Shown here: positions 34,301 to 59,879 of the stretch, piece by piece | Position numbering within the stretch: position 1 is the first letter of the stretch | How the letters are laid out: every line of letters begins with the position of its first letter | Assembly (NCBI GenBank): GCA_964247055.1 | Contig: OZ176054.1 | Span: forward strand, 8,618,001 to 8,682,000 | Reading direction: 5' to 3' | DNA length: 64,000 bases | Source of the DNA: Paragordius varius | Lineage: Eukaryota; Animalia; Nematomorpha | The notes under the pieces: generated by a model | Told to the model about the DNA's origin: nothing | The model's database searches: none | What the model saw: the letters and a program-made list of their open reading frames with translations, nothing else | Made by a program: the position numbers and the translations under genes

Positions 34301-37300
34301 TTAAATCAACAGGGGCCAAAACCAAAAGCTTTATGATAATCCTGATACTATTTATACCAGAATATATATAAAATATCATCAGGATATATTAATACCCCGG
34401 AATTTCGGGCGCAGTGAAGAGCCATTGCGTGAAATTTAGCTTAATTATTGAATGTGACTTAATTATATTAAAAGTACCATGAATGACAGATATTTTAAGG
34501 GAATCAAATTTTTTGAAAACGATAATTATAAATATGATGATGGGGTGAAATGCCAAAAATTACAATGCGAAACGATCATTAATTTGAACCACGATTTACC
34601 TTATTTCCATAAACTAAATAGGCCGAGAGATTTTTTACTTTAGAATCACACTCGAATTTTTCTTTGTAAAAAACACATAGTAAATATATATTCTTAATAC
34701 AAGTTCCGTTTCGTAAATATAAATCTAAATTTTATAAAATTTACAACTTATAAAAAGCTCTTAAAATTTGATTATCCTACATTTAATTTCCGTTTTCTAT
34801 ATTACTACATTCAATCGTTTACATAAGCTTTAACTGCTAAAGGTAAAAATTTGCAAAATTTCTACTTTTCTTCATACAGATTTCGTAAATTAAAATCTTT
34901 CGATTAGGAAATGGGCATCTGGAGCAAGGATTACATTCCAAAAGGCACTCGGTTTGGACCTTTGGAAGGCAAAATCTTTGAAATTCGAGACGTTCCAAGA
35001 AATGTTACTAGAAAATATTTTTGGAGGGTATTTTTTTAGATTTTGAAGGCATTAATATGAAATCGATCACACATATTTTCAATATATTATCTTATCATTA
35101 GATATATGAGGAAATGGGCTTCATAAAATCCAACATATTGAAACATTACATTGATGCATGTGATGAGGGAAATAGTAATTGGATGCGTTATGTCAATCCC
35201 GCTCGTAATATCAAGGATCAAAATCTAGTGGCCTGTCAATTAAATTACAAGATATTTTTCTATACAATAAAACCCATATATCCCGGAACCGAATTATTGG
35301 TTTGGTATTGTCGGGATTTTGAAAAGCGATTAAATGCATCCATGTTTCTCTATCTTCCAAACACAGATCTTATAGGTCTTCATGGCATAAATGCCGTTTA
35401 TACTTGCAGTCAAAACAGTGGGAACAATGCTCATTCAACCATTCACACATTTTTGTGTGATGACAATACCAGTTTGGTTCCAGCCACGACAAGATCAATC
35501 TTTTTTGAGCGGTTACACAAAATGGATGCAAATTTACTTTCTGGCAATGCTAGTAGTAATTATATATACCCTATCCCGCCAACAACTAATACCGAACTTT
35601 GTCTAAATAGAAGAAGAGATGGCACAAGCCATTTGAGATCACCTAAAGTACATAATTTTTCGGACACTATACCAATTTTGAGCTTGGGTCTGACAACAGC
35701 TCAACATGCTTGGGATTCTATCTACCAAAATCAATATCAAAGATTGATGAAGTTGACAACCCTTACCACACTCACTATGCCAGATCAAACAAAGAAACTT
35801 TTTTCCTCCCCATTGTTTCATTCTCAATTAAATGGATTGATTATTACGCAAGGTTATACAAATACCACATCCACAAACAATTTATATAGCAGTGAATATG
35901 CTGGGCTATATGTAACTACTCTCTTTAATGCTATGCAAAGTAAATTTTACTTGTTATTATCGAATCCGAATATTTTAATATTATAGATATTGTAAAAACA
36001 TAAAGGGAGACTTTTAAGGTTGCCAATACATCAAGTGTATAAAATACATTTAAAATAGTCAATGCACAAATTGTGATATAGATAAGAAGCAAATATTATT
36101 GACAATCATTAATTTTAACATAAAATTCATAATTTTTGTTGCTAGTATACATCAATGATATTGAAAATTTTATATAAAACTACTCAAGGCAGGATATTAT
36201 TGTTAAATTTATGAACCTACGGTATAATGCCCTAAAAAATATTTTTTACATTTACGGAATATTAACTAAATCAAAAAATCGCATTTTTTCGCATATTACG
36301 TCAGAAATAAAACTTTTGGGAAAAGCAATAAAGATTACAATTTATTTACCTTTAAAGATATAATTAAATAACTTATTCTCCAATGTATAAAACTATCAAC
36401 TCAATTTTTTGAGGTTAAGATAAGCGAAAATTTAAGACTAAATATTTTTTGGCGGTATTGATTTGGATGTACTAACTAAAAACTATATTTTGTTATTCTG
36501 ATCAAATCGTGCAGCACAAGGCACAAAATAAGGTTAATAAAATTATTCTGTTAAAATTTATACATTTCGTAGAAAAATTTATCGGAATGATGCTTTTGGT
36601 TAAACCCTTACGAGTTATACTTTTTGCCAATTGTTCCATATCGTAATTCGTATATTCGCGCACACATGTTTTTTTCGGTGAAAGCTAAATTATTTTATCA
36701 AAAAATTTATAAAAATATATGACAACCTATATTTAATCGCACAATATCTAAATTAAATTTGGATTTTATATACCAGGCAAAATTTAATCATTAAGGCATA
36801 TTATACCATTAAAATACAGTTTATTTTATTATCAAAATCCAGAAAGTATTAAATATTATTGCAAAATTAGATTTGATGGGACTTTCTAGATCTTATATAA
36901 AAATTAAAATTTAATATAAATCCTGTTTTGCCTATATATATATTATATTATTTCAATAAATTTATGCAATTAGCTTCCATTAAAATAAATATTTCATAAT
37001 ATGCGCTAATTTTGCTATTTTCGATACTTATTTATTATCATGAAATTAATAACTTGACCTGTAAGGTTAAAACCAAAAGCAACGCAAGCCTCTATCTATC
37101 AAAATATTTTTACGTGCACTTTTATGCAGTGTCTATATAAAATACACTGATGAAATAAATATATTCTGATAGAAAATTGTATCAGGATTAACATGGTGCT
37201 TTTGGCTTTGTGGCGAGTGATTTAAGAAATTACACTTTTTGATAACTGTTCCATATCAGAAAAATGATTTGCGCAGATTTTTTTAAAATTTTTAGTGAAA

Positions 37301-40300
37301 TCCAGCTAATTCCCTCGAATATCACTAAAATTGACCATACACTACATGTAAAAATCTAAACATTATTTTAAAATTTTTACTTTTAGATGTGGGCTCCGAA
37401 AGTGTCAAATTTTTGGACCCATCCAAAATGAGCAAGTTCTTTTAATATAAAGGCGGGGCCGAGATTGTGCATTAAAAAATAAAAAAAATATACCGAATTT
37501 TTAAATACAGCAAAATTTTGGTAAAGCGAGTTTTATGGTATTATGAAGCAGGGGAATGAAAACACTTTAAGATTATATATGAACACTTTTTCTATATAAT
37601 CGATGATGCTGAACAATTTTATCACCTCGGAATTCAATAAAGTTCGTATGCTTTTGAATTTGGGTTAATTTTAATAAAAAAATAATATGTGCATAAATTT
37701 GGAGATCAACGATTTGATTCTAACTTCTGAAGTCATAGATGTGTTCAGCATCATCAAATTATATAGAAAAATGTTTATAATAGCGTTTTTATACTGTTTC
37801 TGTCATGCAAAATAATACGGAGTACAATAAAATTTCGCTAAAAATAATTTTGAACAAAGTGTGTATTTTTTCGAAAATATGTTTTTTATTCCAAAATTCA
37901 GCATATTAATTTTTATCGCAACTCGGATTTGCGTATATTACAAGAGCTAAAAAGGCATCACTATAATCCTGATATTTTTCTCTCAGAATTTATATATTTC
38001 ATTGGGATATTATTTTATGCACCCCGATATGACACAATGTAACTATATAACACTTTATATTCACTTCCCTTAGAAATATTAAAAATGTTCTTAATATGAG
38101 GCATATCAAAAACTAAATATTCTTTTTAATGTATTATAATTTTAACAAAAATTAACATTTGACTGCATAGTTTCATATGTATTTCGACTCGTCCTAATGT
38201 GTAAAATTTGGCTAATGCTTTATAGTTACTAATTTAATCTTTACTAAACTAAAGCTTTTAGCTATTAAATGATATACCTTAATTATAGTGTAAATATTAA
38301 TTAATGATAAAATATGGGTTGTTGTAGACACTTAATTAAGTTTTGTAATCAAATCACCATACATTATGATTTTTGACCTTGCGCGGTACCATGTTCAAAT
38401 AAAATTAATATTTGTTTTAGATAATGCACACAAAACATCATGTGTTAATCACTTAATTGAGCCATTGATGCCAAAATCGGCGATAGCTAAAAACTGTCAA
38501 GACAATGATACACACCTTGCCCCATCAGAAGAAGGTAAAGACACCTGTAAAAGTTTTAAACAATCCGATTATGGAGTGGTGACAACTATAAAACAAAAAA
38601 TTTTATCCATCATAACAACTTTATCTCACCCTACTACCGTTTTTACAAACTTGTTAACTAACAATTATAATAATAATAATAGTAATGAGAATAAAACTAA
38701 GCATACTAGAGTATTAAGCGATTCAGATGATAGTGTTGTCGATTCTAAAAGTACAGTAAATCATGATGTAGAAGAAGGAGTAATTGATTACAGCCTGAAG
38801 GGTAATAAGAAAAGATTGATTACAACAAAAACGAATTCACATGCAGCAAAACCACAAGAGGATCCAAAGTTAGATGGTTTACTCTCCCTTTCGACACTAA
38901 ACTCCAACTATAGAAGTGTGGGTGATATACCGATGCAATTCAAAATATCAGAAATAAATGCTATATCTTTTCCAATCATAAATCCGGTTTTAGGTTCTTC
39001 TCCCCATTATATATTCATGAACAATTTATGGCAATACACAAGGCATTCACCATTATATAATTTAAACTTTCTTAAAACTGCCACTAAAACTTCCAATGTC
39101 CATAGACAAATATCTTTTTTAAATAACACAATCACAACAGAAAGTTTATTAATAAAAAACGAAACTGTCACAAGTGAATCACCTGACGGAAGTTTCAAAA
39201 ACGCAATTAACCCTCAAACCAATTTTCATGAAAGCGATTTTATCAATCATAAAAGCTTTGAATCCAAATTTAATCCCTTGTTGGGGAGAGATCAACTTTT
39301 TTATATTAATAACAATAAGCAAAACTATGGAAGCGAAATTTCACCACTATCTGATTTTACTCATCAATCCAACGACGGCTCATTTGGTGAGAATAGTCCT
39401 AATCGCAATGAATTAATTATAAAAGAGGGTATAAATTTTCTAAAACAATTTTCTAACTCTGATCATTCAACTCCTGACAAATTTGAAAATTCTAAAGAAA
39501 TGCAATTGCCTTTAAAAGACACCATTCAAATAAATAAATTAAAAAATGGTTACAATGATAAAACTCAATTCAATCCTCCATCAACATTATCCGCTTTACA
39601 TAGAGCTAAATATGGGGAGTTATATTCTGAAAAAGACCAAAGCTCTTCCGCAAACAATTCAACCCAATTGATTCCAAAAAAACGCGCCTCAATTAATGAA
39701 CCCAAAAAAACAATTTACAATTGCCATATATGCTCCAAAACATTTGGACAATTATCCAACCTAAAGGTACATTTGCGTACACATTCTGGTGAACGTCCCT
39801 TTAAATGTGATCAATGTGGTAAAGGATTCACTCAATTGGCCCATTTGCAAAAACATAACCTTGTACATACCGGTGAAAGGCCTCATGAATGTTCTTTATG
39901 TCAAAAGCGGTTTTCTAGCACGAGTAATCTTAAAACACACCTACGATTACATAGTGGTCAAAAGCCGTTTCAATGCACTGACTGTCCAGCTAAATTTACG
40001 CAATTCGTTCATTTAAAATTGCACAGAAGGTTGCACACAAATGAACAAGGGGATGATTTGTCAACCTATAACGAGACTAAAAATTTTGGTAAAAGCTTTC
40101 ATTATCAGCATTCTCGATCAAACTCAATGAGTTCGAATTCACCCAATAAATCAGATGAAGGATTAGGAACTACAGACACCGAGAAAACATTATCGCCACA
40201 AAATGGGATGTTCTTAAAAAATCCAGTAACAAGGTAATTTAAGAGTTTTATTCACACTTTTGTAAATATAGAGAAATAATACAGAAAATTTTTATTATTT

Positions 40301-47264: not shown

Positions 47265-50200
47265 ATGGGATGCGGCAATTCTAAAAACCAACAATATGAT
47301 GTAAACCCCAGAGAGGCTCCAGGTAGATATTTGAATATTATATATTCTTTTTATGTAGGAAAAATTTTAAACAAGTAATTTTAGATTATACAGTTTTTAC
47401 CATTAAATGTGTTATATATAATTTGATTAACTTTTAGAATTTACCTAACTTTAATTAAGCATTAGCACTCAAAAAACCGAGATAAATATTTTACTTGTCT
47501 CAAGAGCCATAATACCAAATATTTCGTAAATATTTGACACATTTGCAGATATTTATAATCCAAATAAGTACACCACGAAGTTAATAAATAATTTAGGGCT
47601 ATAAAAAACACTTTTAGGACGCGGTTTAAGTATCTCTGCCATAATCTATAGGTATATATATATATATTCAATTATACGTCCATATTATTTAGGTAATGGT
47701 CCTACTACAAAAGACAACATACCGAAAACGGCGGCTTTACGAACACAAAAATCAATTGATGTCGATGATAAAAATCAATCCAATCAGGATGCGGATGGAC
47801 GAGGAATGAGCAAATCCATAAAATCATTGGATAAAGCTCACAATTTTGATGGTGCATATTTAAATGAAGGTGACTCATGCAAATTGGATAAACGACCCTC
47901 TGTAAAATCCACAACCAACAAAGAACCACCTCTTTCACCTTCATCACCTTTGACCCCCAGGAATCCGGTTGTTGAAGTAAATTATAAAATGTTTTGATAA
48001 AAAATATGTAAATAAAAATTTGGGTAGAAATAGTATACAGACCAACCTAATGGGGTTTTAAACAGCAAAAATTGAAATAAAAACTATTAAATAGGTTTTA
48101 ATAGCGCAAATATAAAATTTTATTGAAAAGTATTGGATTCCCAAATATATATTTGTTTCCTTAACATTCGATGTCTCTTTAAAAAAATGACACTGCAAAA
48201 TAATAATCAGAGGCCGAAAAATATAAATTTTAATATTTTTAATCTTATGCTGCTTGAGCTGTAGGGCTTATGAGTCATTTAAAACATTCTTTAGGCTCCA
48301 AAAATACAAAAAAAGAATTTTTTCATTACTATAAATACTTACAAACATCCACAAAACATCTAACCATGTACACTACACAACAATTGATATTATTATATAT
48401 ATACTGATAGAAAAGAGTACTACAAGTTATTGAGTAATATAAATCCATTTTTATCGTAATAATTTTATTTATTGGACATTATGTTAGTTTTTGGTTAGAT
48501 GCTTCAACCCAAATCGTTGTGTTAATTATATGCATTATAAATTTATATATTATAATAGCTATAAAAATGTTCCTTAATTGTTATTTGATGAACTCTGTTT
48601 TTAAAAATATATTATGTTTTCAACACATCGGCAAATTTGAAGGTAAACGATAAAACTCATAAGTGAGGAAAATCTCAGCATGTAATATGTTTAAATGATT
48701 TTTTGATCGTTTTCACTCTGCTTTATTATGCCACTTAATATACTTTAACAAAATTTTGCCAAAATTTAAATAATTATGATTTGTTTTTAGCTTTTACAAC
48801 AAAAGCCAAATTTCAGCGGAGTTAATGATACTTTCGGAGTCCATATACAAAAATTTACAGATACTGTTTTGCTTTTACAGCTGATAACATTTAACAAAAG
48901 AAATAACTAAATTATTTTATTTTTTATATGTTAATAACATATTTAAAGATAATATTTTCGAAAGAAGCTACCTTCCACTAAAAAAATTTTATTTTCTATG
49001 ATGTGCGCTTATTTACAAAAGTGATAAATTTCTTAAATGGCTAGTGAGCCTTAACACCAAAAGCTTCATTATTTTCTCAAAACATTTTTTATCAGTATAC
49101 TTATTTCATCAGAATTTTTTTGGTGTCCACTTTGAAATATTATATTGTTATTTGGATAGGAAAATCGTCAATTTGAAAACAATAAAGAAACGGCATCTAA
49201 ACGAAATTCACTCAAGCAGGAGGACAAAAATATAGATTTGCAAGGTGAAAATGCTCCCGATACAAAAAGATCATCATTAACGGGTAAGAATGGTAGAAAA
49301 TCGAGTGCACGAAAGAGTTTGATCGAATTAGAAAAAGAAGCAAACTTAAGGAATGACTCAAAATCCGGTAATGAAAATGCTAATGGCGATGAATCACCCA
49401 CGATTAATGATAAAGGTTACATATTTTTTGATATGAATAAAAATTTGACTAGTAAAAGAATACTACGGTAAGTCCGTCCACATAATGAGTTTTTTTAGTA
49501 AGCACGCTTAAAACTAACCCACTAAGATTTTCTGATTTTTAAACAAGATCCTATAACCGTAAAAAATTATGCGTTTTTATAAACAATCGTATATAAAAAA
49601 TAATATTTTTTTAAAAAAATCACTATGTGTCTACAGAATAATAATAATAATAATATATAATTTATAGATTTAATTTGAACAATCATTTTCTGTTTAAAAA
49701 AGGGCCATGATGCGGATAATGAGCCATTAGTTTTGGAATTATGAGTGTACACTCCATATACTTAAAAATTATTTAATTACAAGAAATGGATGTTAATTTA
49801 AGAGCATTTTAGAGTTATATGTAGACTATTTTGTTAAAAATCTGTATCAAAATCTTAAGGAAATGGTTTCAATTTATATTAGCAAACGATTAAAAATCAA
49901 AATTATAATCTGATATATGATAAATGGCTTAAAATATATAAATTTGGTTCATATTAATTATTAACACCCTTAACTATATAATTTATAGGGTATATTGTAA
50001 AAGAATTTACCGAATCCCTTCGAGATTTGCATGTTATAGGAACAACACCACGGTCTTCTATCAAACCAACCCCAAACTCACCCAATAACAATCAGCCAGA
50101 AGAGATTGAAAAACAAATACTGTCTCCAAGACCCTCTCAATCAATCCTTCAACCTTTAGAGGCAGACACAAATCAAAAAAGTGGTGAGAATGAAAATTTA

Positions 50201-52244
50201 GAGGGCGAAAGTGTGTTCACACAACCAAACTCTCCCAGTGCTGTGACAAAGGAGGAATTTAAAGAAGATGCTTGGGATGAAAAAAAGGATGAAAGCAACT
50301 ATATTAAAGCTATCGATACAATAATCCCCACAAATAACAATAATATAAATGAAAATAATGAAAAAAATGATAGCGAAGAATTGAATCGCAACGTTTCACC
50401 AATTAGCCGTGAATCGCTGAAAAATGAAAGTAATGCGAACGATACTAACATAGAAAAAGCAACCACGCCTCAACTATTAAGTCCTTCAAAAATGACAAAT
50501 GAAATTGAAGGTTCTCAACAAGCAACTAATCAGTAAGCATTTTAATATTATATAACATTCTTATACTTGGATTACATCACTAAATTTTTTTATTATTCAA
50601 CGCTACATAAATAATAAATGTAAATAATCTTTTTTTGTTTTATTAAAAACATAAAATATTTATTGTGATATAATTTAAATTTTATTTGATATATAAAATT
50701 TTACATTCGTAATGGCATAGGAGTTAACAGCAATTTACGGAACTATAACAGTTTTTTAACATAATTAATAAATTGATTTCTTTTTAATTATTTTAAGTAA
50801 AAATTATTTTATTTGAATAAAAAGGGTATTTGTTTGGATTTTTATAAACTTGTACCTTCTATTAATGTTAAATTATATCACAATGGTTTCTTGAACTATG
50901 CGGGGCTAAAGTACATAACTAATATATGACTAAAAACAATATATACGTGTTTTAAGATATAATTTCAAATTTAACCCAGTAAACGGAGATAAATAATTAT
51001 ATAATAAATGTTACATTTATTATAAACTTTCAATAAATATACAGCGAAGATGAATGCACGCTTAACGACAATGCTGACACTTTTCCTTTGCCACACGATA
51101 CGCGTAATTTGATTGGAAAAATCTTAACACCAAACCTTTATAGTCAATATAATAATATCATTTCCAAGAATGGAATTTCATTGGATAAATGTATTAGACC
51201 TGGAGTTGATAACACTCAATTAGTTGATCCGTTTTCACCAGGTTATAATTATTTTGTTTTTAAAAATTGAAATTGTACACGTAAAACGAAAAAAAATAAT
51301 ATATTTTTATTACTTATAATTTAGGTTTAAATGTTAAATCGGTTCGGAAATGTTTAATAATGAAATTTTTAAAACAATATTAAGTTCATACAAATACAGT
51401 TTAGAGTCTCTTTTTTGCTTTTTATTATAAGGACTTAAATTGTATCCGGACTTGTGAAGGCTTTAACACTTGCCTTCCCAGGGCTGACAGTGATGATGGA
51501 AAAATTGCGTAATTTCGGGATTCGAATGCCTACCCTATTATACCATCACGCCTTCAGAAATTTCTTTAATATCAATTATTAGATATTCAAAACGTGTATA
51601 TTTGAGATATTTATAAAGGCAATTATATAGTCCAATTTTCTTGGCTAGTGTTTTCCTCGCCTCTTCTTATATTGATTATTAATACAACTTTTATACTCAC
51701 TTTTAATATTTTAAAGTTGGTTATGTACATATTCATATCATAATATTATTTTTTATTTTTTGATTATCGTTAGACTTAATAGCACTTGAAGCGGATTGTT
51801 ATTATACGTTCAAATCAGTTTTTGATGAATACATCAGAGCCCAACAACCTAAATTTCAACAAAATCTTGACCAGCGTCCTAACCTAAACCATGTACCTTT
51901 ATTGGCTTTGGACACTCTCCCGCCCATCAGATCTGCCAAAAGGATTTCCATATCATTTTCAAGAAATATTGCTGGTTTTGCATTTCCAGCGGGCACAAGC
52001 CGAATCGAAAGGAGACAAGTTGAAAATATTATTTGTTACGCGGTCAATAGCATTGGACAAACAAAAGGTATTTTGTTTTTTTCATTATGAAGTGGCAACC
52101 AATACAATAAGAAAAATTTTAATTTTTGCCGCAATCTTTTTTATTTAGCAATATCTGAAAAAAACTTTAAAATATAAATTATTTTTTAAAAATACACTTC
52201 TTACATGGATTATTATATGTTTTTTTTCACTTACCATAAAATTT

Positions 52245-52280
<36 letters not shown>

Positions 52281-55200
52281 CGTCTTTGATCTTAGGGACC
52301 TATTACTCCTTCATGCATATGAATGATGATTTACGACAAAAACTAAATCTTTTCAATATAACGAATATTGCACCGCCTCTCTCATATGAAACATCTCAAG
52401 TTTGGTCTGATTGGCCAGATTCACGCGGCATTTGGATAAACGAAGACGAAAATTTAGCCATGTTAGTAAATATAATTGATCATATGCAAGTGCTGGCTTT
52501 TAACAAGGGTATTTATTTCCCCATCATATATATATAATATATATTAATGTGACCAGATAAGCTTTTTTTCGCAGTACAGTACTGAGTTTTCGAAAAAAAC
52601 CTGCGCCTGTACTGCCCTGACTTTTGTACTGTTTTTAATTTTTTTGAAATATATTAATTACCTTTATTTATATGAAAAAATTAATGTAGAATTTTATATA
52701 GTATTTAAAAAATTTTTTTTGGTAAATATTAAGATTGACCTATTTTTAATTGGTTTAAATTCTATTTTTGATTGAGTTATACATGAAATCGGGTTTCAAA
52801 CCGGTAAAACCGCTTAAAGGCAATCGAGCAGTGGCGGAAATAATTCTTTCAACTGTAAGATTTAAGCTAACGACCCTTTAACTCAGGGTTTCCGCAAAAG
52901 CAGCCTCAAAATATAAAATAAACAGAAAATGAATTCATAATATTTTAATAATAATTTGACCAAATTTAAAAGTTCGATGTTAGTTTCATTTGTTTCGGTT
53001 AATTGTGGGATATTTTAATTGTTTCCAATAAGCTAATAAATAGTAAATAACTATATCATCTGATAAACACCGCAGCAAAGATCTGGTTTAAAAATAGGCA
53101 AGGTATTTTTTAATTTTGCACTGCGCCAGGGTTCTAAATATCTGGTCACATTATTAAGAAAGCTGTTATTATAGGCCATTTGAGTATATTAAATGGCTAT
53201 GGGATTTGTGTTAAATTTCTGTTGCCATGTTAAAGATTTTTTGTTATTATTAGTAAATTTAGAAAATTGAGGATTAAAAACAACATGTTCAATTAAATAT
53301 ATAACTTATAATATGAATCTCATGGATAGCACCAGACACCTAAATCAAATCTACTTTTAGCCGCTTAAAATACTGAAATGTCTTATAATAATCTCTCATG
53401 TATTTTATTGCCTTATGATTAACTAAAGTTTAAAAAATTTTAATGTTTTAATAGATTACTCCATATCTCAACCGTTTGTCCAAGCTAGTCAATTCGTGAC
53501 ATCGATGGAAAACGCTTTGTTACAATTAGGTTACTGTTATGTGTGGAGCTTTGAAAAGGGCTTTCTAACAACCAATCCCAACCTGACTGGTACAGCTATG
53601 GTTTGTCAAGCAGCCATTGTAGAAAATGGGCCAACCATCGATGAACTCTGTACATTGTACAATAATACGGGCTTGATTAATGAAAAGATGAGGCTTCATT
53701 TTAGCTGTAATAATGATCAAACATGTGTTCACTCTTTACCATTTATGCCGATTCAAGAGTTAGAACAATATTACAACTTTATTATATTATTGGCTTGTCA
53801 CCTATCGCAATCATCGAATGAAACATCAAATGGATGGGAATTTGTCAAGGATTACAACTTATGCTTGAATGAAAATACTGAAAATGAGTACAATATGCAA
53901 TATCCTCTTCTAGTTCGCCAAAACAATATTTTAGCCACCATACTTACCGTGCAAAATTATAAGGAAGCTAAATTGTTGTCGCGAGAAAATTCTAACAATC
54001 GTCATTTAAATTTTGACACTCTAATTCTACTGGGTAAAGAGGATATATTAAACCAATCGCCTTATCCCGACGGAATGTTATGTAGTAATTTAAGGGCATA
54101 TACCATCTATGAAGATTTGATCAATCAACTTATGGATCAAAAAGAGCTTAGGGCCTATGAATTCTGGAAAAAATTCCAAGATTTATCCAACATAGACCTT
54201 GATATGAAATTTCCATTCGATAATTTTATTTCCGATTGCTTTATAATGTCTGTTGCCAACTTGGAAAATTTTTCATTTGTGCCTTTTATGAGTGAAGAGG
54301 AATTGCTGCAGATATCCTCTGATTCTGAAGTTATTTTTTCATCTATTGAACCTAAGATTGATGGAACATTTTATGATAATATTGACCATAAAAGTATCAA
54401 TAAATTGGGTGCAAAGACATTCTTTGAACCATATTGGGACGAATCAAAGCTTTTATTTAACAATTGGCCAAAAGGGAGATGCGTTTGGATATCTAAAGAT
54501 GAATCCATAGTTTGTTGGATTAATGAAACAGATCATTTTAAAATGTTTGCTTTATCACAAAACCAAGGAATATATAAATTATGGGAACGTTACACTCTTA
54601 TTACAAATGTACTTAGACAAAAATTGATAACGGAAAAAGCAGGCAAAACCGAAATTTTATCAACTTTCCCCTCAACAGCTACCGCTGAATATTATGTTGG
54701 TTTCATTGTTAAAGCCAAAAACCAGAATATAAATTATCTAAAAAATATCTTCTACTTCACAGGATTTCAGGTTGTGAATGAACACGTAAGTAATGGAATG
54801 ATAGAAATTTGGCTAATTGATCAGGCCACTGAACTTCCAGAAGATGCCAACGAGGAAGACAAAGCCCAAAATTATCTTAAACGCATGAATCTTATGCTCA
54901 CAAAAATTTCATATTTGCGATTTATGATTAAACATAGTCATAGTGCAGAAATACTCGATGATGCATTCCGTGAACTTAAAGTAACCTGTAACACTATGGA
55001 ACAAACAGAAAATAAACCAATGTGTAAAGACTTATTGATAAAAAACTTTAATAACTTTCCAACCATTACAAACAAACGTACGGCTTTGGCCAAATCATTA
55101 ACTCCTGAATTATATGCAGAGTTAAGTGAGTTTAAAACTTCGCACGATTTCACGCTTGATGATTGTATCCAAGTTGGTCTTAACAATCAAAACACATATT

Positions 55201-56225
55201 TTTCGGGTTTTATCGCTTTCGACGAGGAATGTTATGATTTATTTGGCGAGATAGTTGATAAAATATTGGAAGTTTACACCAAAGATAGAGTCACCACACA
55301 TCACATAATAAAGGAATTATCCTTTTATCCGGACACACTTGAATCCTTTGATGATGAATATGTATTTTACATTGAACTTGGTGTTATTAGAAACTATGAG
55401 GGGTTCCCTTTAATAGCGGGTTGTAAGTTAGGCCACTTTCACAAAATGGAAGAAATGACAAATAGTATTTTGAAAGGCATTTCTTCACAAATAAAATGTA
55501 CGCCATTTTCATCGATTCCCGAGGAATCGATTGATACGTTTCTAACCGAATATTATGGTACTAACTCAATCATTCATTTTTCCCCGCAACTCAAAAAATA
55601 TTGGCCACGATGTCGCGCAAAGCAGGCCATTGTATCAAAATGTTTTTCACAAAGAGACCTAGAAACAAATAAAATATATACATTGTTTGCTAATGTAGAG
55701 GATCATGTACAATGTTTTAGCACATTACAAAACATGGATATCTGGACACAGTTCAGGGAATTCCATAAATTCATTTATGCACTTGAGAATGAGCTTATGG
55801 CCCAGTATAAACTTTCATTTATGAAGCATGATAAATATGGTTACGTAACAAGTGACCCTATAAACTTAGGTGCAGGTTTTATCCTCCGTTTAAGGCTAAA
55901 ATTACCCAATTTCATAAATGTTAACCCAGCGAATTCTAATACCAAAATAATGCCAAACAATAACTTGGACTATGATATTACCAATATGAATGATATTAGC
56001 AATGAAAAAATGGATAGTATAACAGTAATTAAACGTATCGTAAGCCATTACAATATTAGAATAGTGAGCTGGGATGATCCAATATTAGAAATTATAAATA
56101 GTACATGTTTTGGTTATTCAGAAGTTGAAATAATACAACAAATGATAGATTGTTGCAAAGATCTCATACGTAAAGATATGGAATCTCAATTAACCAATGA
56201 ATCATCAAACGATAATCAAAAATAA
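47265..56225 (+). CDS. Three-domain creatine-kinase-like (ATP:guanido phosphotransferase) protein, predicted catalytically inactive, ~1538 aa
   Basis: Exons 47265-47322, 47693-47976, 49160-49415, 49989-50532, 51045-51241, 51774-52067, 52296-52508 and 53455-56225 join in phase (4617 nt). CK-type motifs: ILTPNLY..ISLDKCIRPGVDN, SRIERRQVE, DWPDSRGIW, SLTPELY..FTLDDCIQVG, GYSEVE. Confidence 0.88.
52545..53153. mobile_element. MITE-like element in the last intron of the kinase-like gene
   Basis: 15-bp perfect inverted repeat taatgtgaccagata (52545-52559) / tatctggtcacatta (53139-53153). Target-site duplication ambiguous. Confidence 0.5.
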
Positions 56226-58285: not shown

Positions 58286-59879
58286 TTATTTAACCCTATC
58301 GAAAAAAAAACAAAAAATATACCTTCCTGCTAAAAAATTTAATATCCCTGCTATTTTCTTAAAAAAATCATCATTTATAAAATATGTAAAATAAGGTTAA
58401 CATCGTATCAAACATTGCAAAAAATAATAAAATAAAAAAAATGTAATCAATAAAACCGGTTCCGGAACCGTTTTCGAAATTTTCGGTTTTATATCGATCG
58501 GTAGCATAATAAAGTTAATGATGGGTTTCGTAAATGTTGGCGGTTCTAATTATTAAATATATTTTAATAAATTATTCAAAAATTATCATAAAATTTGGAA
58601 TATTATCATAAAAACAAATATTATAATTACCTTGTGTCAAAAATCCTTCATTGTCGTATACTTGTTGACCGTCCCGATATATTCTTATGTTTGGAACGCC
58701 ATTAATACCCAAGTTCTCACATGTTTGCAAATGTTCATCACAATCAATCTATTTATTTAAAGTTTAAACGAATTCAGTAAAATAAAAATTTATTGATTTC
58801 AACTTAGCTAAAACCAATCAATGGCAATCTCTAAGAAATCTATTTGATGATTTTAAACTATTTTTGTTGGAACAAAATAATTTCTGCTTCCGAATCAAAT
58901 CTAAATTATATTTTAAAAAATGTTCTACCCTTCAAATAACATTCCTTGTCAAATGTACAAAAGGTGCAACCATGTTACAATATATAATATAAAAATTACT
59001 ATACTTCGGCACAATCATCACGACTGGCACATATATCATGGAAAATAGGCAAAAAATCTTGACTATACTGGCAGCTAAAATATGTAATATGCATGGGTTG
59101 ATAAAAAATAAAAAAAATCATTATTGCTTTTTAGAAAATGCTATCGCGACTGAAACCTAAACTTTTACCTTAACTTTTATGAAAATTGTAAAGTTGTCAT
59201 TCTTTTTGTCGACAGAGTGGTTGAATGATATACGTTACTGAATAAAATTGCATTCTTAATTATGGAAAAAGGATTTGTTTTTAAATAAAGCAGATCATTA
59301 TATTTTATAATAGAAACGCAACATATTTAGCCACCACTGAGTGTTAAACCCACAACGGTTTGACAAAATACATTTTTTTTGCAATATGTAAGCGTGATAT
59401 AAGTCGAATATATAATTCTTCACATTTGATAAACAAATAAATATTTCCCAGGTTTAAATTGACAGCTAGTTTCAAATTCTCACAGTATACTTTTATTAAA
59501 AAAAGGGGATTAGATTTAAAAAATAAATTTTAAGCCTGAAATAAAAAAACGTTCAAGCTCATTATTGAGCTTTCTTCGTATAATAATAACAGAAAAAAAG
59601 ACAAAACATATGTTTTTGGTAAAAAAAACAGCCCCCTAACTTAGATTTTCGCTCTGACATAACAAATTTTACCATATATTATAATTAATTAAAATAAATA
59701 AGAAATAAATAGCTTAAAAGTTACAACAAATACCTTTCTCCATAGAATAATACGATGGCTTTTGCATTGTTTGCTATAAAATTTTCCAAATTTGATCTTG
59801 TATCCAATTTAGTAATCGTACCATCAATTCTCTGTAATAGCAGAATAACTAAAAAACAACCAAAATGCCAAGAAACCAT
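58286..59879 (-). CDS. Signal-peptide, single-domain thioredoxin/PDI-family protein with CxxS site, 123 aa
   Basis: Exons 59879-59734, 59074-59005, 58748-58631, 58350-58323 and 58295-58286 join in phase: MVSWHFGCFLVILLLQRIDG-TITKLDTRSNLENFIANNAKAIVLFYGESCQYSQDFLPIFHDICASRDDCAEIDCDEHLQTCENLGINGVPNIRIYRDGQQVYDNEGFLTQAGILNFLAGRVK. Confidence 0.82.

What the first reader, a model, noticed from the sequence alone, without database searches (positions are those of the whole stretch)
51045..56225. Triple pseudo-phosphagen kinase: all three domains lack catalytic residues
Seen: the NEED motif reads NIID, NETD and NVED; TCPSNLGT reads TNPNLTGT, TFPSTATA and SDPINLGA, so the reactive Cys is lost three times; the SSRVRTGR arginines are replaced in each domain. 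The ORF is nonetheless intact over ~1150 aa. Known: these residues are essential in creatine and arginine kinases, and DWPDxRG and ERRxVE point to the creatine-kinase branch. Inference: a flagellar-type CK trimer repurposed as a non-enzymatic scaffold or sensor. I know of no described example.
Basis: partly seen in the sequence, partly recalled or inferred. Interest (0 to 1): 0.86.

Follow-up and report, generated by a model that had tools for sequence, protein, structure and literature searches.

The report
Triple dead creatine-kinase protein, hairworm
A horsehair-worm-type genome carries an intact, conserved gene for three creatine-kinase-like domains in a row, all of which have lost the residues needed to bind ATP and transfer phosphate. 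It most likely no longer works as an enzyme, and it may be a leftover of the sperm-tail creatine kinase in animals that have lost cilia.

Summary
Window 51045-56225 (+) is a four-exon gene with GT-AG, phase-1 introns. It encodes at least 1157 aa with three phosphagen-kinase folds. The NEED motif reads NIID, NETD and NVED. The reactive Cys is N, F and D. The phosphate-binding arginines (CK R130, R132, R236, R292, R320, R341) are lost or unalignable in all three domains.

It is not a decaying pseudogene:
- The 922-codon last exon has no in-frame stop, against 47-111 in the other frames.
- A colinear homologue in Gordionus (41% identity) shows the same losses.
- Of 11 listed polymorphisms, 7 are synonymous.

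Domain 1 is clearly creatine-kinase type, domain 3 moderately so, and domain 2 cannot be placed. Descent from the metazoan three-domain flagellar CK is plausible. Support comes from the shared architecture, one intron shared in position and phase with cnidarian flagellar CK, a near-intronless layout and a weak positional score signal. Trees and AU tests cannot confirm it.

No RNA evidence could be obtained, the 5' end is unresolved and activity is untested. I found no paper on pseudo-phosphagen kinases. However, many degenerate PK-like proteins, including arrays with every domain dead, already sit in the public databases. The earlier notes I retrieved from this scan held nothing on this gene.

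The parts
51045..51241 (+). Exon B. Start of domain 1 (N-terminal helical PK domain). The acceptor is ...ATACAG|C, and the first base completes a codon, so the intron before it is phase 2.
   Evidence: Pfam PF02807, E 1.7e-09. Splice contexts. Translation.
51774..52067 (+). Exon C. Domain 1 from the guanidino-specificity region to 'IGQTK', including the degenerate RVRTGR stretch (ISISFSRN).
   Evidence: tblastn of Gordionus P0001 residues 3-119, 45% identity, E 9e-28. Splice sites.
52296..52508 (+). Exon D. Domain 1 core with SDWPDSRGIW and the NEED-equivalent NIID.
   Evidence: Pfam PF00217, E 2.3e-08. tblastn. Motifs.
53455..56225 (+). Exon E (2771 nt, stop codon included). End of domain 1 (TNPNLTGT), then all of domain 2 and all of domain 3.
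   Evidence: 909-aa ORF. Pfam PF00217, E 8e-28, and PF02807, E 1.5e-17. No in-frame stop in 922 codons. No GT-AG micro-intron at the window-specific insertions.
53787..54947 (+). Domain 2 (model aa 346-732), the most diverged: NETD, TFPSTATA, and none of the six phosphate-binding arginines nor R135.
   Evidence: HMM score 74.6 bits. Residues. AlphaFold2 pLDDT 83.0; Foldseek hits CK, lombricine kinase (LK) and AK at E about 1e-16, TM 0.6-0.69.
54948..56222 (+). Domain 3 (model aa 733-1157): NVED, SDPINLGA. The 320s lid loop is replaced by a low-complexity insert.
   Evidence: HMM score 116 bits. Residues. AlphaFold2 pLDDT 83.5, with a low-confidence stretch at about residues 320-350 of the model. 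Foldseek hits CK and AK at E about 1e-24, TM 0.77-0.83.
51242..51773 (+). Intron 1 (phase 1, GT-AG). Holds a very high-copy repeat at about 51428-51526.
   Evidence: Splice contexts. DNA contigs run through the introns, and word depth reaches about 2e5 against about 400 for unique DNA.
52068..52295 (+). Intron 2 (phase 1, splits the Gly codon of K|G-YY). Same alignment column and phase as an intron in D1 and D3 of Nematostella and Hydractinia flagellar CK.
   Evidence: alignment column 243, phase 1.
52509..53454 (+). Intron 3 (phase 1, GT-AG). Holds high-copy repeats at about 52545-52768 and 53004-53153.
50027..50532 (+). Candidate upstream exon A. An open low-complexity frame ending in the donor CA|GTAAGC, whose phase (2) fits exon B. 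It is either an N-terminal extension or the end of a separate upstream gene.
   Evidence: 169-codon ORF. Donor context. No Pfam hit. Listed polymorphisms 3 synonymous to 4 non-synonymous. No RNA or homologue evidence.

Best explanation
This is a real, spliced gene of a very AT-rich animal genome related to horsehair worms. Its product, at least 1157 aa, is three tandem phosphagen-kinase folds of creatine-kinase ancestry, and each has lost the residues that do the chemistry.

Shown: the lost residues are the arginines that clamp the ATP phosphates, the catalytic glutamates of NEED and the reactive cysteine. The fold-building residues are kept. The same architecture and the same losses occur in Gordionus, so inactivation predates the split of the two lineages. 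The gene has stayed open and colinear since then.

Inferred: with the positively charged phosphate pocket gone, and the 320s lid loop deleted or replaced, none of the domains can bind MgATP in the canonical way or phosphorylate a guanidino substrate. The protein therefore works non-catalytically, most likely as a rigid three-module binding or scaffolding protein.

Inferred, less certain: it descends from the metazoan three-domain flagellar (sperm-tail) creatine kinase. On this reading it was freed from catalytic constraint when the lineage lost cilia and flagella, and was kept for a secondary role.
For: - **Gene model and fold:**
- **Residue table** against 11 flagellar CKs, other CKs and AK/taurocyamine-kinase (TK) sequences.
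- **Homologue:** Gordionus P0001 is the only close relative among 1.84e9 representatives (741 bits, 39-41% identity, colinear). It carries NDVD/NETD/NVQD and lacks the same arginines. D2 is only 12-20% identical to active kinases but 40% identical between the two worms, as conserved as D1 (39%) and D3 (44%).
- **Pattern of decay:** Cys283 survives only in the Gordionus D3 and Glu232 only in the window's D3. This is expected if catalysis was already lost in the ancestor and these residues then drifted.
- **Constraint:** 0 in-frame stops against 47-111 in other frames. Of 11 listed exon-E polymorphisms, 7 are synonymous and 4 are conservative changes (binomial p 0.008 against 25% expected).
- **Fold kept:** AlphaFold2 pLDDT is 83 for D2 and D3, and both match CK and AK structures.
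- **CK ancestry:**, and the ML tree.
- **Flagellar-CK link:** the intron at K|G-YY, phase 1, is shared with D1 and D3 of two cnidarian flagellar CKs and is absent from shark cytosolic-type and tardigrade CK genes. Acanthaster and Saccoglossus flagellar CKs have all three domains in one exon, as D2 and D3 are here. The cognate flagellar domain scores best in about 18 of 33 species-by-domain comparisons, where 11 are expected (my tally).
- **Cilia loss:** Nematomorpha are reported to lack most ciliary genes (PMC12094185, citing Cunha et al. 2023).
Against: - No RNA evidence. The runs that hold the locus are DNA, and the presumed RNA runs of the same species hold none of it.
- The 5' end and start codon are not defined.
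- Activity and ATP binding are inferred from sequence only. Pseudoenzymes sometimes keep activity through relocated residues.
- The AlphaFold models were built on alignments dominated by canonical kinases, so they lean towards the family fold.
- The polymorphism sample is small, is only the 'best supported' subset, and the 25% expectation is approximate.
- AU tests reject neither monophyly of the six nematomorph domains (p 0.42), which would mean an independent triplication, nor a position outside the CK clade (p 0.40).
- All six branches are very long, with odd amino-acid composition.
- The positional score signal is weak. Only one of six tests reaches p 0.04.
- Whether mitochondrial CK genes also carry the shared intron was not tested.
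- Whether this genome keeps an active CK or AK is unknown.
Confidence: 0.7

Rival explanations
1. The protein is a conserved pseudoenzyme, but it does not come from the flagellar CK. A single-domain, cytosolic-type CK-like gene triplicated within the hairworm lineage, before or after losing activity.
For: In the ML tree D1 and D2 are sisters (99/98), next to tardigrade CK and a shark CK-like protein rather than inside the flagellar-CK group. The AU test does not reject monophyly of all six nematomorph domains (p 0.42). No ecdysozoan appears among the 120 best relatives of a flagellar CK.
Against: The D1+D2 grouping joins the two longest stems (4.7 and 10 changes per site), so long-branch attraction is likely. 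The catalytic motifs differ between the three domains, so the domains were already separate when they degenerated. The shared phase-1 intron, the one-exon layout of D2-D3 and the weak cognate-domain score trend all point to the flagellar gene. Flagellar CK occurs in Cnidaria, Deuterostomia and Spiralia, so the ecdysozoan ancestor probably had it.
Confidence: 0.2
2. One or more domains still catalyse a phosphotransfer or bind a nucleotide or guanidino ligand by non-canonical residues. The protein would then be an unusual enzyme or a metabolite sensor, not a pure scaffold.
For: The window's D3 keeps Glu232, and the Gordionus D3 keeps the CPS cysteine. D3 has a well-conserved N-terminal substrate-side domain (LDDCIQVG, DEECYDL). 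D2 keeps Glu231 and has Lys at position 236. Pseudoenzymes with relocated catalytic residues are known in other families (PMC10211241 abstract).
Against: Nearly all of the six phosphate-binding arginines are gone in every domain of both species; by the alignment only R130 in the Gordionus D1 and a doubtful R at 320 in the window's D3 remain. The 320s lid loop is missing or replaced. The residues that do remain are not the same in the two species, which looks like drift rather than a preserved alternative site.
Confidence: 0.1
3. It is a decaying pseudogene or an annotation artefact that merely looks intact.
For: There is no RNA evidence. Divergence from active kinases is extreme.
Against: A 922-codon exon with no stop in a 33% GC sequence, where shuffles give at least 48 stops. 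Three clean phase-1 GT-AG introns. A colinear 41%-identical homologue without stops in Gordionus. An excess of synonymous polymorphism.
Confidence: 0.03

Closest known systems
Flagellar (sperm-tail) three-domain creatine kinase of sea urchins, tunicates, annelids and cnidarians (for example P0191 Lytechinus, P0205 Chaetopterus, P0200 Nematostella)
   Same: Three contiguous CK-type domains in one polypeptide of about 1150 aa. The gene is intron-poor. A phase-1 intron at K|G-YY in D1 is shared with the cnidarian genes. A phase-2 intron lies just before domain 1.
   Different: Only about 15-28% identity. Every catalytic motif is degenerate in all three domains, whereas the flagellar CKs keep NEED, CPSNLGT and all the arginines three times over. 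The host phylum is reported to lack most ciliary genes. The N-terminal myristoylation exon has not been identified. Positional orthology is not resolved by the trees.
[quoted passage not shown]
   Same: The best solved-structure match by sequence and by fold for D2, D3 and the Gordionus D1. It is also a contiguous multi-domain phosphagen kinase.
   Different: It has two domains and was crystallised with arginine and nucleotides bound (entry titles). Its high rank here comes partly from two domains adding up their scores.
Pseudoenzymes and pseudokinases as a general class
   Same: The fold is kept, the catalytic residues are lost, and the sequence is still under constraint. This is the working definition used in the field (abstracts of PMC10211241 and PMC5106787).
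   Different: Those reviews concern mainly protein kinases. None of the papers listed in that search held the term 'phosphagen kinase', and my other searches found no phosphagen-kinase example either.
Unnamed multi-domain PK-like proteins with degenerate motifs on metagenome or eukaryote-like contigs (P0005, P0008, P0009, P0042)
   Same: Three or four tandem PK folds, each keeping 0-2 of the 8 key residues.
   Different: No specific relationship to the hairworm protein was shown (about 25% identity). Their genes are intronless on contigs of unknown organisms. Nothing is published on them that I could find.
Shark 'creatine kinase M-type-like' (P0069)
   Same: An animal CK-lineage protein with Q130, S132, K231 and K320 in place of the canonical residues. 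It is one of the better matches to D1.
   Different: It has a single domain and keeps Cys283, Glu232, R236, R292 and R341. Its gene has the standard vertebrate cytosolic-CK exon pattern.

Membership tests
Phosphagen (ATP:guanidino) kinase superfamily | N-terminal helical domain (PF02807) followed by an alpha/beta catalytic domain (PF00217) | tested here: met
   Pfam hits above the curated cut-offs. Three domains found by HMM. AlphaFold2 models of D2 and D3 superpose on CK, AK, LK and glycocyamine kinase (GK) structures.
Phosphagen (ATP:guanidino) kinase superfamily | Catalytic set: arginines R130, R132, R236, R292, R320 and R341 (CK numbering), Glu231/232 of NEED, and the reactive Cys283 of CPSNLGT | tested here: not met
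   The window's domains keep 0, 0 and 1 of 8 key residues; the Gordionus domains keep 1, 0 and 2 of 8.
Phosphagen (ATP:guanidino) kinase superfamily | Guanidino-kinase activity | not testable with these tools
   Needs recombinant protein and enzyme assays.
Creatine-kinase lineage (CK, GK, LK and CK-derived AKs), as opposed to the arginine-kinase lineage | Closer in sequence to CKs than to AKs | tested here: met
   Gordionus D1: solved CKs 120-140 bits, arthropod AKs 66-86. Window D1: flagellar CKs average 106-113 bits, AK/TK 63. D3: CKs about 70-87, AKs 43-65. D2: no clear preference.
Creatine-kinase lineage (CK, GK, LK and CK-derived AKs), as opposed to the arginine-kinase lineage | Placement inside the CK clade in a phylogeny | tested here: inconclusive
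   The best ML tree nests all six domains on the CK side. The AU test does not reject moving them to the AK side (p 0.40).
Flagellar three-domain creatine kinase | Three contiguous CK domains in one polypeptide | tested here: met
   The homologue in Gordionus is colinear.
Flagellar three-domain creatine kinase | Each domain orthologous to the domain at the same position (D1, D2, D3) | tested here: inconclusive
   The tree gives no positional grouping, and the flagellar domains themselves are poorly resolved. Pairwise scores favour the cognate domain in about 18 of 33 comparisons against 11 expected, and only one of the six single tests reaches p 0.04.
Flagellar three-domain creatine kinase | Shared gene structure | tested here: met
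   The phase-1 intron at K|G-YY is shared with D1 and D3 of Nematostella and Hydractinia flagellar CK and is absent from shark cytosolic-type and tardigrade CK. D2 and D3 sit in one exon, as in Acanthaster and Saccoglossus. Mitochondrial CK genes were not examined.
Flagellar three-domain creatine kinase | N-terminal myristoylation signal (MG...) and flagellar location | not testable with these tools
   The 5' exon(s) are unresolved and no RNA is available. Nematostella's protein starts MGCGASK. That flagellar CK is myristoylated is from my own knowledge.
Flagellar three-domain creatine kinase | Three catalytically competent sites | tested here: not met
   For this reason I do not file it as a flagellar CK, only as a probable derivative of one.
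Pseudoenzyme | Catalytic residues lost while the fold and purifying selection are kept | tested here: met
   Residues. Fold. Constraint. A formal dN/dS could not be run because no Gordionus coding DNA was available.

The most novel reading that the evidence does not exclude
An enzyme of a lost organelle survives as a non-enzyme. On this reading the three-domain sperm-flagellum creatine kinase was kept in hairworms, which have lost cilia and flagella, as a conserved catalytically dead protein with a new binding or structural role. It would be the first characterised member of a much wider, undescribed class of dead phosphagen-kinase arrays that is also seen in microbial eukaryotes.
Probability: 0.4. 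Interest if true: 0.7.

Novelty: new variant of a known kind. Interest (0 to 1): 0.55.

Why it matters
Phosphagen kinases are textbook energy-buffering enzymes, and I could find no described pseudoenzyme member of the family. This gene gives a clean case. All three active sites of a multi-domain kinase are dismantled in different ways, yet the 1157-residue frame is conserved between two divergent hairworm lineages.

If the flagellar-CK origin holds, it links organelle loss (cilia and flagella in Nematomorpha) to the repurposing of an orphaned enzyme. It would also show a CK-lineage gene surviving in Nematomorpha, an ecdysozoan phylum.

It also flags that many PK-like proteins annotated as 'creatine kinase' or 'arginine kinase' in databases are probably not kinases. 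That matters for annotation and for work that treats parasite phosphagen kinases as drug targets.

Tried and rejected
- **RNA support.** The one run search found only DNA holders. The presumed RNA runs of the same species hold none of the locus, and the contigs laid on it run through the introns. Expression, splice junctions and the 5' end therefore stay unproven.
- **Gordionus DNA.** Fetching it for intron comparison and dN/dS failed, because there is no exact record. Lineus, Watersipora and Branchiostoma flagellar-CK loci also failed.
- **Trees.** The careful ML tree and two AU tests were inconclusive for both the CK/AK question and the triplication question.
- **ESM Atlas.** The feature search with D2 gave only scores of 0.81 or below to unrelated small proteins.
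- **Calibration.** I tried to gauge the divergence between the two species with the neighbouring PRDM-like gene. No Gordionus orthologue was returned.
- **Micro-introns.** Earlier notes on this genome report 20-30 nt introns. I found no GT-AG candidate at the window-specific insertions in exon E.
- **Intron repeats.** No Rfam family or tRNA was found anywhere in the window, so none explains them.
- **Literature.** Searches for pseudo or inactive phosphagen kinases and for hairworm phosphagen systems found nothing relevant.
- **Readings rejected.** A bacterial-style single ORF, since it is a spliced gene. A decaying pseudogene. Arginine-kinase ancestry for D1.

Full report
**What is there**

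The window is about 26% GC. Earlier notes of this scan place the genome near horsehair worms. This fits my finding that the only close relative of the protein is an unnamed protein of Gordionus sp. (P0001).

It is a gene of at least four exons on the + strand: 51045-51241, 51774-52067, 52296-52508 and 53455-56225. Its three introns are GT-AG and phase 1. Spliced, the exons read 1157 codons with a single terminal stop.

Pfam recognises the N-terminal and catalytic phosphagen-kinase domains in the pieces. An HMM built from canonical kinases finds three full domains: D1 at aa 1-345, D2 at 346-732 and D3 at 733-1157. They score 133, 75 and 116 bits. Each domain of a genuine flagellar creatine kinase scores about 480 bits.

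I aligned the domains to 11 named flagellar CKs, other CKs and AK/TK sequences.

| Site (CK numbering) | D1 | D2 | D3 |
|---|---|---|---|
| NEED | NIID | NETD | NVED |
| CPSNLGT | NPNLTGT | FPSTATA | DPINLGA |
| R130, R132 | S, S | F, M | E, G |
| R236 | Q | K | Q |
| R292 | V | Y | I |
| R341 | F | E | C |

R320 is lost or unalignable, and in D3 its loop is replaced by a low-complexity insert. The residues that survive are the fold-building ones: N230, D233, H234, P284, the W and R of DWPxxRG, and R135 (kept in D1 and D3, Ala in D2).

**It is a constrained gene, not a wreck**

- Exon E has no stop in 922 in-frame codons. The other five frames have 47-111 stops, and 1000 shuffles give a mean of 71 and never fewer than 48.
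- The Gordionus protein aligns colinearly over 1060 positions at 41% identity, with few indels.
- The Gordionus protein shows the same losses: NDVD/NETD/NVQD, with nearly all the same arginines gone.
- D2 is only 12-20% identical to active kinases. Yet it is as conserved between the two worms (40%) as D1 (39%) and D3 (44%). Its radical divergence therefore happened before the two lineages split and then slowed.
- Cys283 survives only in the Gordionus D3, and Glu232 only in the window's D3. This is the pattern expected if the ancestor's D3 had already lost its arginines, and so its activity, and the remaining catalytic residues then drifted independently.
- DNA contigs from other individuals give 11 listed differences in exon E. 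Seven are synonymous and four are conservative replacements (R>H, I>L, K>R, T>A). The binomial p is 0.008 against a rough 25% synonymous expectation. This is a small, pre-filtered sample.

**The fold is kept**

AlphaFold2 models of D3 (pLDDT 83.5, pTM 0.85) and D2 (83.0, 0.83) have the complete two-lobed kinase architecture. Both match CK, AK, LK and GK crystal structures. D3 matches at E about 1e-24 with TM 0.77-0.83, and D2 at E about 1e-16 with TM 0.6-0.69.

The input alignments were mostly canonical kinases, so these models lean towards the family fold. The low-confidence stretch in D3 is the insert that replaces the 320s lid loop.

**Which branch of the family**

D1 is clearly creatine-kinase type.
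- The Gordionus D1 scores 120-140 bits against solved CKs and 66-86 against arthropod AKs.
- The window's D1 averages 106-113 bits against flagellar-CK domains and 63 against AK/TK domains.

D3 prefers CKs more mildly. D2 cannot be placed by score.

The best ML tree (LG+C20, careful search) nests all six hairworm domains on the CK side. However, their stems are 4.7-10 changes per site, their composition is deviant, and an AU test does not reject moving them to the AK side (p 0.40).

**Is it the flagellar CK?**

Named three-domain flagellar CKs occur in echinoderms, hemichordates, tunicates, amphioxus, cnidarians, an annelid, a nemertean and a bryozoan. No ecdysozoan appears among the 120 best hits.

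The tree gives no positional orthology. It groups D1 with D2, which are the two longest branches. An AU test does not reject a hairworm-only triplication (p 0.42).

Three other lines favour the flagellar gene.
- **A shared intron.** I mapped exons exactly for five CK genes. The window's intron 2 splits the Gly codon of K|G-YY after its first base. Introns in D1 and D3 of both Nematostella and Hydractinia flagellar CK do exactly the same (alignment column 243, phase 1). The shark cytosolic-type and tardigrade CK genes have no intron there.
- **Layout.** Acanthaster and Saccoglossus flagellar CKs carry all three domains in one exon of about 3.3 kb. Nematostella has one 1.8-kb exon from the end of D1 into D3. 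Here D2 and D3 share a 2.8-kb exon. In all of these genes a phase-2 intron precedes domain 1.
- **Scores.** In pairwise scores the cognate flagellar domain is best in about 18 of 33 species-by-domain comparisons, where 11 are expected. The single tests are weak, with only one of six reaching p 0.04.

I rate flagellar-CK descent as more likely than not, but unproven.

**Context**

Nematomorpha are reported to lack most ciliary genes (PMC12094185, citing Cunha et al. 2023). That flagellar CK shuttles energy along sperm tails is established knowledge; the Tombes and Shapiro papers are listed in PMC6429109. A sperm-tail enzyme orphaned by loss of the flagellum and kept for something else is therefore a coherent story, but it is an inference.

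**How it probably works**

Shown: the folds are present, the catalytic and phosphate-binding residues are absent, and the sequence is conserved.

Inferred: there is no canonical MgATP binding and no phosphoryl transfer. The protein would act by binding, for instance as a rigid three-module scaffold, perhaps keeping partners of the ancestral enzyme. Nothing here tells which partners, which tissue, or whether a small ligand is still bound.

**How new**

I found no paper describing a pseudo-phosphagen kinase. The sequence databases, however, are full of degenerate relatives.
- Of the 142 nearest PK-like proteins, 44 keep 3 or fewer of 8 key residues in every detected domain.
- These include 3-4-domain arrays on unnamed contigs (P0005, P0008, P0009, P0042).
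- A shark 'CK M-type-like' protein lacks R130 and R132.

This gene is therefore a new, well-supported variant of a known enzyme kind and of the pseudoenzyme concept, not a new category.

**Limits**

- There is no RNA evidence.
- The start codon is unknown. A 169-codon low-complexity ORF at 50027-50532 ends in a donor whose phase fits exon B, and it may be an N-terminal extension.
- No Gordionus DNA was available for a formal dN/dS.
- I could not check whether the genome keeps an active CK or AK.

Noticed in passing
window 51428-51526, 52545-52768, 53004-53153: The introns of the gene carry very high-copy repeats. Contig word depth is 1e4-2e5 against about 400 for unique DNA, with many loose ends at the repeat borders. 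No tRNA or Rfam family matches.
   Followed up: partly
window 47806-47997, 49238-49471, 50027-50536 (+): A chain of low-complexity (S/N/E/K-rich) open frames lies upstream on the same strand. The last one ends in the donor CA|GTAAGC, in the phase that exon B needs. It is either an N-terminal extension of the pseudo-kinase or a separate gene. No Pfam hit.
   Followed up: partly
window 35114-35986 and 38366-40237 (+): A PRDM1-like gene: a PR/SET-domain ORF followed by a C2H2 zinc-finger ORF. The best named hits include PR domain zinc finger protein 1-like of Priapulus.
   Followed up: partly
P0069 (locus L006): A shark 'creatine kinase M-type-like' protein with the standard vertebrate CK exon pattern has Q130, S132, K231 and K320. 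It may be a vertebrate pseudo-CK paralogue.
   Followed up: no
L001:3001-7338, L002:2184-6467 (P0008, P0005): Intronless genes of about 4.3 kb on unnamed ENA contigs encode multi-domain phosphagen-kinase-like arrays (four detected domains in P0005, three scored in P0008), and each scored domain keeps 0-1 of the 8 key catalytic residues. In all, 44 of the 142 nearest PK-like proteins are degenerate in every domain.
   Followed up: partly
window 50226-56225: Nucleotide diversity is high. One individual shows two haplotypes at about half depth each. Another individual differs at about 2% in exon E (31 differences in 1578 bases) and far more in intron DNA (12 differences within 55 bases at 50922-50976).
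   Followed up: no
window 58572-58730 (-): A short ORF with a weak thioredoxin-domain match (E 0.009, below Pfam's cut-off), possibly an exon of a thioredoxin-fold or PDI-like gene downstream on the other strand.
   Followed up: no
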